Below are positions 29,222 through 38,237 of a stretch of DNA of 64,000 bases, piece by piece. The stretch is from positions 310,001-374,000 of the IMG/VR virus record IMGVR_UViG_3300029893_000001; one strand, given 5' to 3'. Position numbers and translations under genes: made by a program. Each line of letters begins with the position of its first letter. Positions within the stretch are counted from its first letter, which is position 1. The notes beneath the pieces are model-generated. The model did no database searches, had not been told where the DNA came from, and saw nothing but the letters and a program-made list of their open reading frames with translations.

Positions 29222-30250
29222 TCATGCCGTGAAACCCGGAATTGGCTTGAGGTTTGATTGATGACGGCCGAACGAATCGACCCTCATTTGATGAAACGTC
29301 TCGATCAGATTCTCTTTCGACCAGTTTGGTCGAGAGAGGGGGTCTCTTACAATCAAACGCTTCACGAACTTGCACATGGGATCTGGAGTCGACGCTGGAA
29401 CCTTGAGAGCTGACACCCCGTCGTAACTACCGGTGAGACAATACAACATGGTCTTACCCAGGCTGTACAAGTCTGTCTCCGGAATTGGAGGCTTCCCGTC
29501 CACCATCTCCGGGGCCGAAAATAATTCGGTGTATCCCTTGGCTGCCGTCTTCCCGGTAGGACGAATGGCTGCCAGTCCGAAATCGACCAACACGGCGAGA
29601 TGCTTGTGTGGCTGCACGATGACGTTCTTCGGCTTCAAATCTCCGTGCACGACGCCGTGTTGGTGAAGGTATAACAGTCCGTTCAAGAGACGCTGGGTGA
29701 TCCATGCCACATTCTCTGGGTCCAAGCGTCCAGCCTTGTCAACGACCTCCTCCAGCGTTGGACCCTCAACATAGGACATGACGAGGATGATGCTCCCATC
29801 ATCATGGCGAATGACATCCCTCATGGCAGGCAGTGCGTAGTGCCTCATGTCCCAAAGCGCACGAGCCTCGTCCATGAGGATAGCCTCTGATTCTGGGCCT
29901 GTCATGAAGCCCTGCTTAAGGCAGGCCGGATGCTTGAGGATGAGGTGCTCAGCTTTGTATGTAGCGCCAAAGCCGCCCTCTGCGATCTTCTCGACAACAC
30001 GATAGTTGCCAATAATCGTGCCTTTCTTCGCGAGCTTCTCGAAGCGGGCGCGCTTTTGGGCGCTTACAAGGATACTGTGAGCCTCATTGATTTCCTTGGC
30101 CATGGTGTCGTCACCCCCTGACCGATCAGGATGGTACTTCACCAGCAAGGCCTTCTTGGCAGCGTCAAGAACTTCTCGCGACGCATTCACGGAGACCTGA
30201 AGGATGTCGGCCAACTCACGGAGAGTCTCCGCCTTTTCAACCAAACCCAT
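29222..30250 (-). CDS. J-domain fused Hanks-type Ser/Thr protein kinase
   Basis: KYHPDR (J domain), EGGFGATY, HGDLKPKN, DFG, APE, DLYSLG. Confidence 0.92.
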   Translation of the reverse strand: MGLVEKAETLRELADILQVSVNASREVLDAAKKALLVKYHPDRSGGDDTMAKEINEAHSILVSAQKRARFEKLAKKGTIIGNYRVVEKIAEGGFGATYKAEHLILKHPACLKQGFMTGPESEAILMDEARALWDMRHYALPAMRDVIRHDDGSIILVMSYVEGPTLEEVVDKAGRLDPENVAWITQRLLNGLLYLHQHGVVHGDLKPKNVIVQPHKHLAVLVDFGLAAIRPTGKTAAKGYTELFSAPEMVDGKPPIPETDLYSLGKTMLYCLTGSYDGVSALKVPASTPDPMCKFVKRLIVRDPLSRPNWSKENLIETFHQMRVDSFGRHQSNLKPIPGFTA

Positions 30251-32260: not shown

Positions 32261-33981
32261 GCTTCATGCAATGCGGACATTTTAGACGGACCGTCTTAGG
32301 ACGTTCGGTGAATGTTCCATCAACACCCCAGCCCCCATTTTGCAGAGCATCTAGGATATCTTGTCCTGTTTCTTGCGGGGATTCCATCGAGAAGGGCTGG
32401 ACACTGTGACAGCGCGGCTCGTCGCAACGAGCATGCATCGTGATAGACATTATTCACCTCCGTCAGTTCATTATTCACCATCCAGAATAGCGCAGAGATC
32501 ACCCCCAATCACTGGAGGCGTCCGACCTCTTTGCCGTCAACTGGAATTAAGATACCTTTTGGGAGGACAGGAACATCCGAGAAGGCGTTGTCTACCTCCC
32601 CTCCTTGTCCAAATCGCTCATCAATTACTGATTCAAGCTGCTTCGGGCTGAAGCGAATGCATAAAGGATTAGGGCATTCAGCGGTAGAGAACCCTACGTA
32701 TGCATCGTTCGCACCACAGGTGGGACACTTCATCTTGCTCACCCAGAACAAAGAAATTCAAAGGTTTCGTTCTCTTCGTCGAAGAGAATAGCGGTAGTAT
32801 AGAGCAATTCATAGGATGAGCCATGTAACTCAACCTGGACCTGGTAGGTGGTCTCGTTGGACGACGTTAACGTAGCCGTGAACGGCTTGCCAGATACTGT
32901 AGCGAAGGCCCTATCACCTTTGGGCACCTCGAATCTAGTAAGGGTGATGGACTCACCTTCAACAGAGTGGCATAGCTCAACATAGAGAGGATTCGTTGTA
33001 GTCTTGATGGTTATCATCTCGACAATTTCAGGATTCTCTATGACGATTATACGGGCCTTCAATTCTTCGACATAGCGAAGGCCGGGTACTGTCTTCCCTA
33101 GACATGCGTCTTTGTGCCTCTGCGAGAAATAGAGACAAGCGGCGTTGACGCACTCAATCGTGAAGCCTGAATTGTAGACTTCTTCCGCACTGCAAAAGGG
33201 ACACTGTGCCACACTACTCTCCACTACCTAAGCGGTAGAATTGACCACGTTTGATCATTCGCGCCAAACGTTGGCGGTATGACTCTTCAGATTCGCTGTC
33301 TCTACGAGGAATGACTTCGCTTGCCAGATCAACTGCCAGGCACCAAATTGAATTGGTGCAATGCGTAATTGGAGTACCTACAGTCCTAGCGTCGCGTCCT
33401 TCTCCCACCGTGCACGGTCGGCTCGATCTCGCTCTTAGCCGGCGGCCGAGGGCGGGCTGGGAGCCAAGAACGCCGTCAGGCGATCCGTGCCCGCGGTCAC
33501 GGCCTCGTGGGCTCCGGCGCGGGCTCGTCGAGTGCCAACTTTGCCACCTCAAACAGCCGCGCCCATAAGGTCGCTTCGTCGCCCTTTTCCGGGCGGGGCT
33601 TCCTGACTTCCGTGCAGAATACGCAACAACACTCTAATTCTGCAGTTGTCCAGACTAAGTCGTCGTACTTAGGCATATCCGTCCTCGATATCCCATTTAC
33701 ATCGGGTGCAGTACGAGTTACATCGGGTGCAGTACGAGTCTTCGGTGTGAAAAAGACCTATTCCACATTTGGTACAGTTGCGAGTAGCTTTTGCTCTGGT
33801 TGAGCATGCGATACACTGCCAATCAAAAGGCTTTGGCTCTCCCGCGTCGATTGCTGCAGCTCGAACTCGTGAACACGTACATCCGTTCGGGTCTGAAAAA
33901 CATATCCGTTCCCGCCGCTTAAAAATGAGATTCGTGCGCCGCGGGATTGCACGAAACTAAAGCGTGGCTTAATGTCCATGC

Positions 33982-34173
33982 GTGCGCGGGGCGACCGCCA
34001 GCTCGCCCGACTGGGACCGCCTCTTCGAGATCGCGGCCGCCCAGGATGGGCTCTTCACGACGCGGCAGGCGGCCGAGGCCGGCTATTCGCCGCAGCTGCT
34101 CGCGCACCATCTGGGCGCCGGACGCGTGATCGAGGAACCCTCCCGCGCGCCAGCGGTGAGCATTGGGGAGTGA
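33982..34173 (+). pseudogene. truncated AbiEi-type (type IV TA) antitoxin N-terminal domain
   Basis: LFEIAAAQDGLFTTRQAAEAGYSPQLLAHHLGAGR then loses similarity; locally GC-rich, opposite strand. Confidence 0.7.
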
Positions 34174-34195
34174 CCCCGACGAAAAATGAAGTAGA

Positions 34196-34274
34196 TGGAC
34201 TAGGCGGGAGTTGAACGCCGCACGACGCCCAGGGTTGCCCGGAAGCATTGCCCCGAACGCCATCCCTCTAGCCC
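34196..34274 (-). ncRNA. tRNA-like mini-RNA resembling the tmRNA tRNA-like domain
   Basis: Acceptor GGGCTAG/CTAGTCC with G3-U70 and A73, T-loop TTCAACT, 13-bp internal helix, no D arm. Confidence 0.55.
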
Positions 34275-34483
34275 TGAACCCTTATCTGTTCTTGCGCTGG
34301 GACTTTCGGGCCATCTTCCGGCGCTTCCGGTTCTGAGCCTTCCGCTTCTGCATTTGCCTCATACGGGACGCTGTGGTTACCCCAGTTTCGTACGCCTGAA
34401 CGTCAGTTGTGGTATCCTGCGCCTCTTCCGCTAGGCTGTCCTGAAGATTTGCGTTCGTGATGTTGTCGGGAACATGCATTTCA

Positions 34484-35029
34484 CTAACCTATTCGTCTAA
34501 GAGAGGGTTCGCCTAAGAGGTGAATGGCTCTTTCCACGTTTTTTCTCGTAATTCCCACCCGGGAATCGGTCTGCACGAGGAACTGCTCTCGTGGGATACG
34601 AGTGCAGCGAACGAGCCGATCCCAATCATGCTCCTGGTCATCCAGGACCACAAACTTCTCTACCTGGTCGACAAAAGCCCACATGAAGAGGAAGTCGTAA
34701 ATCTCGTCCGCACGAGTTGTTTCCTCGTACACGCTCCCATCTTCATTCGTCGTCCACTGCAGGAGAGGCGTTGCTGCCAACACGGGGCGCAGCCCGGCCC
34801 GAGCCAGTACGACGCTCATTCTGGGGTCGGACCGGGTACTACTCGACAGTATGATATCCGCTCCCGTCTGGTCTACGATTTCGTTGACCAGCAGGACTTT
34901 GGACGGGTCGATCCACCGGACGAGATCATCAATCGTGGACTTGAGGTCCGGGACCAAATTGTTTCTTCGCCCCCAATCGACATCGTTGAGGACGCCGTCT
35001 ACATCAAGGAAGAGAAACTTGAGACTCAT
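34484..35029 (-). CDS. HAD-family phosphatase (Swiss-Army-Knife RNA-repair type)
   Basis: FLDVDGVLN, ILSSST, RADEI, VVLDD. Confidence 0.85.
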   Translation of the reverse strand: MSLKFLFLDVDGVLNDVDWGRRNNLVPDLKSTIDDLVRWIDPSKVLLVNEIVDQTGADIILSSSTRSDPRMSVVLARAGLRPVLAATPLLQWTTNEDGSVYEETTRADEIYDFLFMWAFVDQVEKFVVLDDQEHDWDRLVRCTRIPREQFLVQTDSRVGITRKNVERAIHLLGEPSLRRIG

Positions 35030-37266: not shown

Positions 37267-37851
37267 CTAAACGCGGCTGCGCAGGTACGCCCAGCGCTCT
37301 TCGAACATGGATTGGAAGGCTGTTTCTAGTGGTCGGGGCTCTGTCATCACGACCTCGTAAATCTTACGGGCGGCGAGGAAGTCGTAGATTCGGCCCGACT
37401 CTACAATTTGGATCGCAAAGTCCAACACCCGGAAAGCGTGGTAGACTCTCTCAGGATCATTGATTCGAATGCCCTTGGAGTAATCCGCTTGTGCCTTTTC
37501 TAGCGCAGAAAAGACCACCCGCTCTCGATGGGCATCATCTTTGACCTTGAAGGTCTCGAATTCCACCAGACGCTTGAGTATGTGGGACGAAGGAGCAAAT
37601 ACGCACTCCAGCGAGAAGATGTTCCCGTTCCGGAGGCTGTCTTGGAACGAGGAGATTCCTCGAACGATGACATCAATTCCAGTGCCACGAGCTAAGTCGT
37701 CTCGGGTGCAGTCAGCCAAGACCACCACGTAATCACGGTCCGATTCCGGCGTAGCCGTTCCGTACACCTGGCTCCCAACGCGAAACGCCGCGAGGACTTC
37801 CTTATCCTCACGGCGTGCAACATGAAGCACCTGTTGGTATTCAGGTTCCAT
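37267..37851 (-). CDS. Pol-beta-family nucleotidyltransferase
   Basis: GSQVYGTATPESDRD; C-terminal YHAFRV. Confidence 0.85.
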   Translation of the reverse strand: MEPEYQQVLHVARREDKEVLAAFRVGSQVYGTATPESDRDYVVVLADCTRDDLARGTGIDVIVRGISSFQDSLRNGNIFSLECVFAPSSHILKRLVEFETFKVKDDAHRERVVFSALEKAQADYSKGIRINDPERVYHAFRVLDFAIQIVESGRIYDFLAARKIYEVVMTEPRPLETAFQSMFEERWAYLRSRV

Positions 37852-38237
37852 TGTTCCACTCAGCCCTGCCGCCAGTGTCCTGCCAGCGCAATTGGGTCTC
37901 GAAATGGTCGTCTCCATCCCACCGAGGAGCAAATGCTGCAAACACACCTACCCGACGACCTGTTGTCTTCTGCACGTAAGGAAACAGCTCACCTCGACGG
38001 TAAGCCCAAACCCCTCCGTGAATACGCCTGAGGTGTTCGATGATTCGCCCGCCTAACCACCTACGTCTCGTCAGCACGGCGTCACCAAAAGACGAAGAAT
38101 TCGAGCCAGAAGAATGATAGCCCTACCGAGAAATTTCCTTTGTCAACCCGCACCCAATGCGACCTACGCTGAGTCCACCAACGCGGGCACCACTGAACTA
38201 CGAATTCACACCCAAGAAGAGCAAGTCGCATATCAAT

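What the first reader, a model, noticed from the sequence alone, without database searches (positions are those of the whole stretch)
34196..34274. 79-nt alanine-acceptor mimic shaped like a tmRNA tRNA-like domain with no message
Seen: a 7-bp acceptor GGGCTAG/CTAGTCC with G3-U70 and discriminator A; a 4-nt linker instead of a D arm; a 13-bp GU-rich helix capped by a small hairpin; and a T arm with one bulged C (GCGGCG TTCAACT CCCGC). Known: G3-U70/A73 is the AlaRS identity set, and the 3' end resembles typical tmRNA 3' ends (GCGGGTTCAACTCCCGCC...CCA). Inference: a mini-TLD that could be CCA-added and alanylated and might titrate SmpB/EF-Tu or act as a nuclease decoy. Alternatively it is a collapsed tmRNA/tRNA or att-site relic beside the foreign AbiEi fragment.
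Basis: partly seen in the sequence, partly recalled or inferred. Interest (0 to 1): 0.75.

Follow-up and report, generated by a model that had tools for sequence, protein, structure and literature searches.

The report
Message-less tmRNA-like tRNA mimic in phage
A 79-base stretch of a 392-kb phage genome folds like the alanine-accepting, tRNA-like end of a tmRNA with no message; one mycobacteriophage has a similar element, and nothing here shows whether this copy works or is a decaying leftover.

Summary
On the minus strand (34274->34196) there is a 7-bp acceptor stem with G3:U70 and A73, a 4-nt linker, a 13-bp helix with five G:U pairs, a 4-bp cap with a UCCG loop, and a T arm with one bulged C.

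The fold is strand-specific (-38.1 against -21.4 kcal/mol). A post-hoc scan puts chance at well under 0.03 per genome.

ARAGORN and all Rfam tRNA and tmRNA models miss it, and it has no paralogue and no detectable homologue.

The window belongs to a jumbo phage with 44 tRNAs, its own full tmRNA, a YrlA-like RNA and a CCA-adding enzyme.

The idea is not new. Mycobacteriophage DS6A carries an 80-nt "TLD only" tmRNA (TLD = tRNA-like domain). A model built from this element finds the DS6A gene as its best hit outside this phage (24.4 bits).

Unlike DS6A, this element lacks the tmRNA D-loop and GGAC signature.

Its 3' end lies 32 nt from a patchwork of bacterial DNA snippets, including a 191-nt abiEi piece essentially identical (0-2 differences) to bioreactor contigs.

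No variation, transcript or syntenic relative is available, so an active mimic (0.4) and a relic (0.35) cannot be told apart.

The parts
34196..34274 (-). Whole 79-nt tRNA-like element. The RNA 5' end is at 34274 and the discriminator A at 34196.
   Evidence: Sequence. The minimum free energy fold equals the described structure. The fold is strand-specific. Chance scan.
34268..34274 (-). Acceptor stem, 5' strand GGGCUAG (RNA positions 1-7)
   Evidence: Pairs with positions 72-78, including G3:U70.
34264..34267 (-). 4-nt linker AGGG (RNA 8-11) in place of a D arm
   Evidence: Unpaired in the minimum free energy fold.
34222..34263 (-). Long arm (RNA 12-53): a 13-bp helix with 5 G:U pairs, a CAA/A internal loop, and a 4-bp cap with a UCCG tetraloop. 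Its 5' strand holds GGCGUUCG, which resembles the tmRNA D-loop analogue GGnUUCGAC.
   Evidence: Motif comparison with the Rfam tmRNA consensus, the phage's own tmRNA, L011 and DS6A.
34204..34221 (-). T arm (RNA 54-71): GCGG[C]G UUCAACU CCCGC, with one bulged C
   Evidence: Identical to the T arm of the L011 tmRNA except for the extra C.
34196..34203 (-). Acceptor stem 3' strand CUAGUCC (RNA 72-78) and discriminator A (RNA 79). No CCA is encoded.
   Evidence: Only 4 of 45 phage tRNA and tmRNA genes have CCA at or just after the 3' end.
34164..34195 (-). 32-nt trailer with a U-rich run and a small GGGG/CCCC hairpin. GC is 0.50, like the phage.
   Evidence: Not held by the bioreactor, sludge or wastewater contigs.
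34282..34479 (-). 65-aa ORF with a very basic C-terminal tail. Its TAA stop lies 7 nt before the element. It has no detected homologue.
34484..35029 (-). Upstream gene: HAD phosphatase of the 'Swiss Army Knife' RNA-repair type (HAD_SAK_2)
   Evidence: Pfam PF18143, E 2.7e-19. Homologues occur in other large phages, without this element beside them.
34124..34163 (.). 40-nt captured snippet, identical to part of an unrelated contig in a bioreactor metagenome
   Evidence: read laying record 9 of run X7, 0 differences.
33935..34125 (+). 191-nt captured 5' piece of a bacterial abiEi gene: 47 nt of upstream sequence and the first 48 codons. It is antisense to the phage genes.
   Evidence: Pfam AbiEi_4, E 7.4e-8, profile positions 1-39 of 49. 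Contigs of runs X7, X10 and X16 match with 0-2 differences and continue in frame as MVRVRRGVYR. GC is 0.71 against 0.53 for the genome.

Best explanation
This is a message-less, tmRNA-type tRNA mimic: a 'TLD-only' mini-tmRNA of the kind known from mycobacteriophage DS6A. It is carried by a jumbo phage that invests heavily in translation RNAs.

Shown:
- The shape, the alanine identity set, the strand specificity and the genomic setting.

Inferred working, none of it shown here:
- It is transcribed with the minus-strand operon of the HAD_SAK_2 gene and the 65-aa ORF.
- RNase P cuts it free at G1, and the U-rich trailer is trimmed.
- The phage's or the host's CCA-adding enzyme adds CCA.
- Host AlaRS charges it with alanine through G3:U70 and A73 in a 7-bp acceptor stem stacked on the T arm.
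- With no anticodon and no reading frame it cannot decode or tag. It would act as a competitor or sink for factors that handle the acceptor/T half of tRNA and tmRNA: AlaRS, EF-Tu and possibly SmpB.
- The DS6A-like TLD fragment is reported to do this when it inhibits tmRNA.
For: - The complete three-way fold is the minimum free energy structure: 29 pairs, no mismatch and one bulge.
- All seven non-Watson-Crick pairs are G:U on the minus strand. The plus strand therefore folds worse than its shuffles.
- The element lies on the strand of all flanking genes, 7 nt after a stop codon. The DS6A element lies likewise, 11 nt after gp33.
- Chance is at most about 0.03 per genome for the geometry with the stable arm, and lower with G3:U70 and A73.
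- The 3' 26 nt equal a real tmRNA 3' end save one base.
- The 5' part holds GGCGUUCG where tmRNAs have GGnUUCGAC.
- Model R1, built from this element, has DS6A's TLD-only gene as its best hit in 91 kb of other loci: 24.4 bits, E 0.005, full length.
- The phage has 44 tRNAs, a tmRNA, a YrlA-like RNA and a CCA-adding-type enzyme.
- Its GC of 0.67 lies inside the range of the phage's tRNAs, 0.49-0.70.
- Literature: DS6A 'TLD only'; a similar molecule strongly inhibits tmRNA (PMC4131195, PMC11915505). A TLD fragment with SmpB is active on ribosomes in vitro (PMC3929946).
Against: - No Rfam tRNA, tmRNA, mt-tmRNA or YrlA model matches, even at E<=10 on 99 nt. DS6A scores 43.2 bits.
- The D-loop analogue is imperfect and is paired away in the fold.
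- The GGAC before the T stem is absent.
- The T stem carries an inserted C next to the G53:C61 pair. That looks like damage and may hinder EF-Tu, RNase P or the CCA enzyme.
- It is a singleton. It has no paralogue in the genome. It has no homologue in viral contigs, GTDB species genomes, phage records or plasmid records.
- All five assemblies of the phage are 100% identical here, so there is no covariation to read.
- No RNA run is shown to hold it.
- It lies in a roughly 0.7-kb non-coding stretch that holds recently captured bacterial snippets.
- The phage has a full tmRNA of its own and no SmpB. An SmpB sponge would also hurt its own tmRNA.
Confidence: 0.4

Rival explanations
1. It is a dead relic. 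A tmRNA or TLD-only gene, or a fragment of one, was acquired from an unsampled donor or collapsed by an internal deletion. It now sits unselected in a junk-tolerant intergenic stretch, and the fold is inherited rather than maintained.
For: - Its 3' end lies 32 nt from a demonstrable patchwork of captured bacterial DNA: 33935-34125 and 34124-34163, with 0-2 differences from contigs of other habitats and joined over a 2-nt overlap.
- There is an extra C in the T stem and an extra base in the D-loop-like motif.
- The tmRNA signature is missing, and all covariance models fail.
- It is a singleton with no relatives.
- The accessory region is absent from the contigs of the four closest relatives found.
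Against: - There is no mismatch in 29 pairs, and the cap is a clean UNCG tetraloop.
- All wobble pairs favour the transcribed strand. For five independent transitions in a decaying palindrome, that has a probability of about 1/32.
- The trailer between the element and the foreign patch has phage-like GC of 0.50. The element itself was not found in the donor metagenomes.
- A random internal deletion of a tmRNA would keep the D-loop analogue and the GGAC.
Confidence: 0.35
2. It is a cis-acting tRNA-like punctuation or stabiliser element. The structure serves only as an RNase P or RNase Z cleavage site, or as a 3' protective cap, for the upstream mRNA of the HAD gene and the 65-aa ORF. A variant is that it releases the downstream antisense-abiEi RNA. 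It would not act as a free RNA.
For: - It starts 7 nt after the stop codon, on the same strand.
- No sigma-70-like promoter and no terminator was found around it on that strand.
- An acceptor/T minihelix is enough for RNase P. This last point is general knowledge and was not tested here.
Against: - Nothing in such a role requires G3:U70 with A73 or a tmRNA-type T arm.
- The phage's other operons were not seen to use such elements. R1 finds no second copy.
Confidence: 0.1
3. It is a decoy substrate for host toxins that attack the tRNA acceptor end. Candidates are AbiEii/MenT-type nucleotidyltransferases, acceptor-stem nucleases and aminoacyl-tRNA acetyltransferases. The decoy would soak them up during infection.
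For: - DUF1814 toxins of the MenT and AbiEii family add nucleotides to the 3'-CCA of tRNAs (PMC7450476, PMC10435456, bioRxiv 10.64898/2026.01.19.700257).
- The element presents a bare acceptor/T minihelix.
- A piece of a host abiEi gene lies 70 nt away.
Against: - The abiEi piece is a truncated snippet, captured separately and joined to an unrelated 40-nt snippet. Its closeness is therefore probably accidental.
- One low-copy RNA is a poor sink against a whole tRNA pool.
- There is no experimental or comparative support.
Confidence: 0.07
4. It is a chance tRNA-like fold in GC-rich sequence.
For: - The overall folding z-score is only -1.9.
- Loose tRNA-like geometry arises about 0.77 times per 392 kb in random sequence.
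- Two probable chance hits lie on the non-gene strand of the real genome.
Against: None of the 23 random hits had a comparable inner hairpin or G3:U70 with A73. In addition, the T arm equals the tmRNA consensus, there is a GGnnUUCG motif, the cap is a UNCG loop, and the strand is the right one.
Confidence: 0.03

Closest known systems
Mycobacteriophage DS6A 'TLD only' tmRNA (JN698994 28478-28557, 80 nt; tmRNA Website tmID 11587)
   Same: - It is phage-borne and about 80 nt long.
- It has a 7-bp acceptor stem with G3:U70 and A73, one stub arm with a small capping hairpin, a T arm, no reading frame and no encoded CCA.
- It lies a few nt after the stop of the upstream gene, on the same strand.
- Model R1 from the present element hits it at 24.4 bits.
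   Different: - DS6A keeps the tmRNA D-loop analogue (UGGUGGUCGAC) and a short linker before a regular 5-bp T stem. It scores 43.2 bits with RF00023.
- The present element has a 4-nt linker, a continuous 13-bp helix, a bulged T stem and no covariance-model score.
- DS6A is a 60-kb temperate phage without a full tmRNA. This phage is 392 kb and has its own tmRNA.
CDS-less organellar tmRNAs (jakobid mitochondria, RF02544; Mallomonadaceae plastids, about 65 bp)
   Same: These are tmRNA descendants reduced to the tRNA-like domain, with no tag reading frame (PMC11915505).
   Different: - They are organellar and usually have a permuted gene form.
- They co-occur with a targeted SmpB.
- RF02544 gives no match here.
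tmRNA tRNA-like domain (RF00023, RF04321), for example the permuted tmRNA in L011
   Same: L011 has the same acceptor stem, GGGCUAG/CUAGUCC, and the same T arm sequence. It also has G3:U70 and A73.
   Different: The present element has no pseudoknots, no resume codon or tag, no GGAC and an imperfect D-loop analogue. Its gene is in standard order, not permuted.
tRNA-Ala and the alanine minihelix (an AlaRS substrate defined by G3:U70)
   Same: It has G1:C72, G2:C71, G3:U70 and A73 on a 7-bp stem stacked on a T arm.
   Different: It has no D arm and no anticodon arm or loop. Position 4:69 is C:G, as in this phage's own tmRNA, not G:C. The tRNA model RF00005 does not match.
YrlA / bacterial Y RNA-like tRNA mimics (RF02553)
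   Same: This is another non-decoding tRNA mimic. The same phage carries one in its tRNA array.
   Different: YrlA has a Ro-binding stem and a permuted T/acceptor/D module. The present element has neither and does not match RF02553.

Membership tests
tmRNA (RF00023 / RF04321 / RF02544), including TLD-only forms | Match to the family covariance model | tested here: not met
   No tmRNA-clan match at E<=10 on 701 nt or on 99 nt. It is absent from the 16 matches of the genome-wide RF00023 search. The positive control, DS6A TLD-only, scores 43.2 bits, E 4.8e-16.
tmRNA (TLD) | 7-bp acceptor stem with G3:U70 and discriminator A | tested here: met
   Pair list. The same stem occurs in the L011 tmRNA.
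tmRNA (TLD) | Regular T arm (5 bp, 7-nt GUUCRANNC-type loop) directly 5' of the acceptor 3' strand | tested here: inconclusive
   The loop and the 3' strand are canonical and identical to L011. The 5' strand has one extra C, which forms a bulge between pairs 52:62 and 53:61.
tmRNA (TLD) | D-loop analogue GGnUUCGAC after the acceptor stem, and GGAC before the T stem, forming the base of P2a | tested here: not met
   Only GGCGUUCG is present. It has one extra base and no AC, and it is paired within the 13-bp helix. No GGAC is present, and there is no spacer before the T stem (against the consensus).
tmRNA (full) | Resume codon, tag reading frame and pseudoknots | tested here: not met
   79 nt leaves room only for a hairpin. 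ARAGORN finds the phage's real tmRNA elsewhere, with the tag ANNVVSLFGNVVANDNGTAEPLPLAA.
tmRNA (TLD-only) | Binds SmpB, is alanylated, and inhibits trans-translation | not testable with these tools
   The complex-prediction job was not folded and gives no evidence either way. The phage has no SmpB hit.
tRNA (RF00005) | Cloverleaf with a D arm and an anticodon arm with a 7-nt loop; detected by ARAGORN or Infernal | tested here: not met
   No call at default settings. Only poor, mismatched, shifted calls appear when ARAGORN thresholds are lowered.
Phage attP or island att-site remnant of a tRNA or tmRNA gene | 3' gene fragment only, next to an integrase, identical to a host gene | tested here: not met
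   Both acceptor strands are present. The phage has no tyrosine integrase hit. The 20-mer of the 3' end is absent from 185,579 species genomes.
Expressed small RNA | A transcript with defined ends | tested here: inconclusive
   No listed RNA run holds the stretch. One metatranscriptome of the source study laid nothing. Those data are contigs of small runs, so absence proves nothing.
Conserved RNA gene | Homologues with compensatory base changes | tested here: inconclusive
   Five assemblies are 100% identical. Contigs of relatives lack the locus.

The most novel reading that the evidence does not exclude
The element and its neighbours form a phage anti-AbiE module.
- The CCA-tailed alanine-acceptor mimic would be a decoy substrate for AbiEii/MenT-type nucleotidyltransferase toxins, which modify tRNA 3' ends.
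- Read-through transcription would make an RNA exactly antisense to the 5' end of a host abiEi mRNA, including its start region. The tRNA-like fold would act as the processing and stabilising 5' module of that RNA.
- Capture of short host snippets behind a tRNA-like scaffold would then be a way for a phage to make antisense RNAs against host defence genes.
Probability: 0.04. Interest if true: 0.85.

Novelty: new variant of a known kind. Interest (0 to 1): 0.4.

Why it matters
If active, this would be the second phage example of a message-less tmRNA-like RNA, after DS6A. It would be the first in a jumbo phage that also carries a full tmRNA. It would also be built without the usual SmpB-contact motif.

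That raises two questions. Do phages use bare alanine-acceptor mimics against trans-translation? Or do they use them against other acceptor-end machinery, such as AlaRS, EF-Tu, the CCA enzyme or acceptor-modifying toxins?

It also shows that such elements escape ARAGORN and Rfam, so they may be under-counted.

If it is a relic, it is ordinary. In that case the adjacent patchwork of near-identical host snippets is the more curious feature.

Tried and rejected
- Default detectors: ARAGORN and Rfam at gathering thresholds and at E<=10 do not call it. Lowered ARAGORN thresholds give only poor, shifted calls, which I rejected.
- Exact-pattern scans with 16- to 23-mers, and one gapped acceptor-to-T-arm pattern, taken from the element:
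  - Viral contigs gave 0 relevant hits. Three 16-mer hits turned out to be chance matches in coding DNA.
  - GTDB species genomes gave 0 hits twice.
  - JGI metagenomes gave 3 hits. One is a true permuted tmRNA with the same acceptor and T arm. The other two are matches to the 3' part only, and no tRNA or tmRNA is called there.
- BLAST against phage and plasmid records found nothing meaningful.
- Synteny through the HAD_SAK_2 gene: its homologues lie in other large phages with different neighbours, and no tRNA-like element is nearby. Those phages have a Gp23-type capsid gene that this phage lacks, so the HAD gene is not a marker of kinship.
- Synteny through a helicase with 66-86% identity: I found four true relatives. 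Their contigs are only 8-42% complete and lack the HAD gene, the kinase gene and the 241-aa gene. R1 finds nothing in them.
- The 65-aa ORF has no relatives in viral contigs.
- Descent from one of the phage's own tRNAs or its tmRNA: local alignments score no better than shuffles.
- attP idea: the phage has no integrase hit.
- Co-transfer with abiEi: rejected. Donor contigs continue into abiEi and do not hold the element.
- Composition does not place the element in the foreign patch.
- The SmpB-RNA complex prediction was not folded by the tool and gives no evidence for or against binding.
- The MAG that holds the phage contig (L015) is not in the genome collection, so it gave no host clue.

Full report
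**1. What is there**

The feature lies on the minus strand of window 34196-34274. The RNA has these parts:
- GGGCUAG, the acceptor 5' strand.
- AGGG, a 4-nt linker.
- A 13-bp helix with five G:U pairs.
- A CAA/A internal loop.
- A 4-bp cap with a UCCG tetraloop.
- The T arm GCGG-C-G UUCAACU CCCGC.
- CUAGUCC, the acceptor 3' strand.
- The discriminator A.

RNAfold gives exactly this three-way junction as the minimum free energy structure: -38.1 kcal/mol, z = -1.9. The complementary strand folds to only -21.4 kcal/mol, worse than its own shuffles. That is because all seven wobble pairs are G:U on the minus strand.

**2. Is it chance?**

I wrote a scanner for three things together: a T loop TTCRANN, a 5-bp T stem with or without one bulge, and a directly adjoining 7-bp acceptor stem.
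- It recovers nearly all of the phage's tRNAs and four other sites, one of which is this element.
- Thirty first-order Markov genomes of 392 kb gave 0.77 hits each.
- None of those 23 hits had an inner hairpin of comparable stability per nucleotide, and none had G3:U70 with A73.

The test is post hoc, but chance is very unlikely.

**3. What the standard tools say**

- ARAGORN calls two ordinary tRNAs in the window and not this element.
- Rfam finds nothing at gathering thresholds.
- Rfam also reports no tRNA-clan family at E<=10, whether given 701 nt or 99 nt.
- Lowered ARAGORN thresholds give only mismatched, shifted calls.

**4. Setting**

The window is bases 310001-374000 of a 392,328-bp virus record. 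That phage has:
- 44 tRNAs, including one with anticodon CUA, and a full one-piece tmRNA with a 26-residue tag.
- A YrlA-like RNA in the tRNA array and a weak Ro/TROVE hit.
- A CCA-adding-type enzyme.
- No SmpB, no AbiEii and no tyrosine integrase.

Only 4 of the 45 tRNA and tmRNA genes have CCA at or just after the 3' end.

The element starts 7 nt after the TAA of a 65-aa ORF with a very basic tail. That ORF follows a HAD_SAK_2 (RNA-repair type HAD) gene, and all are on the minus strand. No sigma-70-like promoter and no minus-strand terminator lies nearby.

**5. The neighbouring 'AbiEi fragment'**

Pfam confirms an AbiEi_4 N-terminal piece, E 7.4e-8, profile positions 1-39 of 49.

I laid contigs of bioreactor, wastewater and sludge metagenomes on the region. 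This showed:
- Window 33935-34125 matches them with 0-2 differences. The contigs then continue in frame with the rest of abiEi (MVRVRRGVYR).
- Window 34124-34163 is identical to part of an unrelated contig.
- None of these contigs holds 34164-34281.

The left neighbour is therefore a patchwork of recently captured bacterial snippets with GC 0.70-0.71. They are joined over a 2-nt overlap, and the abiEi piece is antisense to the phage genes.

The 32-nt trailer between the patch and the element has phage-like GC of 0.50. The element's GC of 0.67 lies within the range of the phage's tRNAs. So the element was not co-transferred with abiEi, and it cannot be assigned to the foreign patch by composition.

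**6. Relatives**

- The same phage occurs in five assemblies from subsurface and rock metagenomes. All are 100% identical over the locus, so there is no variation to test.
- One rock-metagenome contig leaves the phage sequence exactly at 33935. This is probably an assembly crossing at the shared abiEi repeat.
- HAD_SAK_2 homologues (45-62% identity) lie in other large phages with different neighbours and no tRNA-like element.
- Those phages have a capsid gene type that this phage lacks.
- True relatives were found through a helicase of 66-86% identity. They are fragments that lack this accessory region.
- Exact-word scans of the 3' end gave no hit in 185,579 species genomes or in viral contigs.
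- The same scan gave three hits in JGI metagenomes.
- One of the three, L011, is a real permuted, beta-type tmRNA: 135 bits with RF04321. Its acceptor stem and T arm are the same as here apart from the extra C.
- Four of the last eight bases are fixed by the alanine identity set, and the T arm is a common tmRNA one. This match therefore shows tmRNA-likeness, not direct ancestry.
- The 5' part holds GGCGUUCG at the place where tmRNAs have GGnUUCGAC. That includes this phage's own tmRNA, L011 and DS6A. This is a further, imperfect tmRNA trait.

**7. Prior knowledge**

The tmRNA literature already lists a phage 'TLD only' gene in mycobacteriophage DS6A. It states that a similar molecule, chargeable or not, strongly inhibits tmRNA, perhaps by titrating SmpB (PMC4131195; PMC11915505, citing Mao et al. 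2009).

My scanner finds that gene as its only hit in the DS6A genome: JN698994 28478-28557, 80 nt, 11 nt after gp33.
- RF00023 scores it at 43.2 bits.
- Model R1, built from the present element, hits it full-length at 24.4 bits, E 0.005. That is the best hit in 91 kb of other loci and is above real tRNAs.
- R1 finds no second copy in this phage.

CDS-less tmRNAs are also known from jakobid mitochondria and some plastids (PMC11915505). A TLD fragment with SmpB is active on ribosomes in vitro (PMC3929946).

**8. Interpretation**

The element is real, strand-specific and tmRNA-like. Its closest known counterpart is the DS6A TLD-only gene.

It is not a demonstrable member of the tmRNA family. The covariance-model test fails and the D-loop/GGAC signature is absent. 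The T stem also carries an insertion that could be damage.

| Reading | Confidence |
|---|---|
| Active message-less alanine-acceptor mimic: co-transcribed, cut by RNase P, CCA-tailed, alanylated, competing for acceptor-end factors | 0.40 |
| Dead relic | 0.35 |
| Cis-acting processing or stabilising element | 0.10 |
| Decoy for acceptor-end toxins such as AbiEii/MenT (mechanism from PMC7450476, PMC10435456 and bioRxiv 10.64898/2026.01.19.700257) | 0.07 |
| Chance | 0.03 |

- For activity: the mismatch-free fold, the UNCG cap and the wobble pairs that all favour the transcribed strand.
- For decay: the singleton status, the junk-tolerant locus and the two one-base irregularities.
- The phage's own tmRNA and its lack of SmpB make a pure SmpB sponge less attractive than in DS6A.

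**9. Limits**

- No transcript evidence could be obtained. No listed RNA run holds the stretch, and one small metatranscriptome laid nothing.
- The protein-RNA complex tool did not fold the job and gives no evidence either way.
- No covariation test is possible with the identical copies.

Noticed in passing
window 33935-34163: Patchwork of captured bacterial DNA. It holds a 191-nt 5' piece of abiEi (0-2 differences from bioreactor, sludge and wastewater contigs) joined over a 2-nt overlap to a 40-nt piece identical to another contig. GC is 0.70 against 0.53 for the phage. The abiEi piece is antisense to the phage genes.
   Followed up: partly
L018:1523-1556 (junction at window 33935): A rock-metagenome contig is identical to the phage from the HAD gene through the tRNA-like element and the abiEi piece. 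It then diverges exactly at 33935 into sequence found nowhere in the phage. This is a variant or an assembly crossing at the shared repeat.
   Followed up: partly
L029:42-176 (genome 120341-120475, minus strand; outside the window): A YrlA (Y RNA-like, RF02553) match of 54.8 bits, E 8e-12, below the gathering score of 69. It lies inside the phage's tRNA array. A weak TROVE/Ro hit of about 22-23 bits, right at the Pfam cut-off, lies in a 560-aa ORF at genome about 96199-96387.
   Followed up: partly
genome 120482-120544, minus strand (in L029): Another short tRNA-like fold, 63 nt with an acceptor stem and a T arm but no proper D arm. It lies just upstream of the YrlA-like RNA. My scanner found it and ARAGORN did not call it.
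   Followed up: no
genome 105653-105726, minus strand (outside the window): A tRNA with anticodon CUA, an amber suppressor that ARAGORN labels 'Pyl'. It is one of 44 phage tRNAs. The phage also has a full tmRNA at genome 130641-131041.
   Followed up: no
window 33700-33739: A direct tandem repeat of a 19-nt core, CATCGGGTGCAGTACGAGT, with a period of 21 nt. It lies in the non-coding stretch left of the abiEi piece.
   Followed up: no
window 33362-33630: A second short GC island (GC 0.65-0.71) in the same non-coding stretch. It may be another captured snippet. The one ORF here that I searched, 33214-33552 on the minus strand, had no Pfam hit.
   Followed up: no
window 29222-30250 (-) and 37267-37947 (-): A Ser/Thr protein kinase fused to an N-terminal DnaJ domain (Pkinase, E 1e-30). 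The second ORF has a weak nucleotidyltransferase-domain hit (NTP_transf_2, E 9e-4). Both are in the same accessory region.
   Followed up: no
window 34484-35029 (-): A stand-alone HAD_SAK_2 (RNA-repair type HAD phosphatase) gene. It is shared at 45-62% identity with several otherwise unrelated large phages, always with different neighbours.
   Followed up: partly
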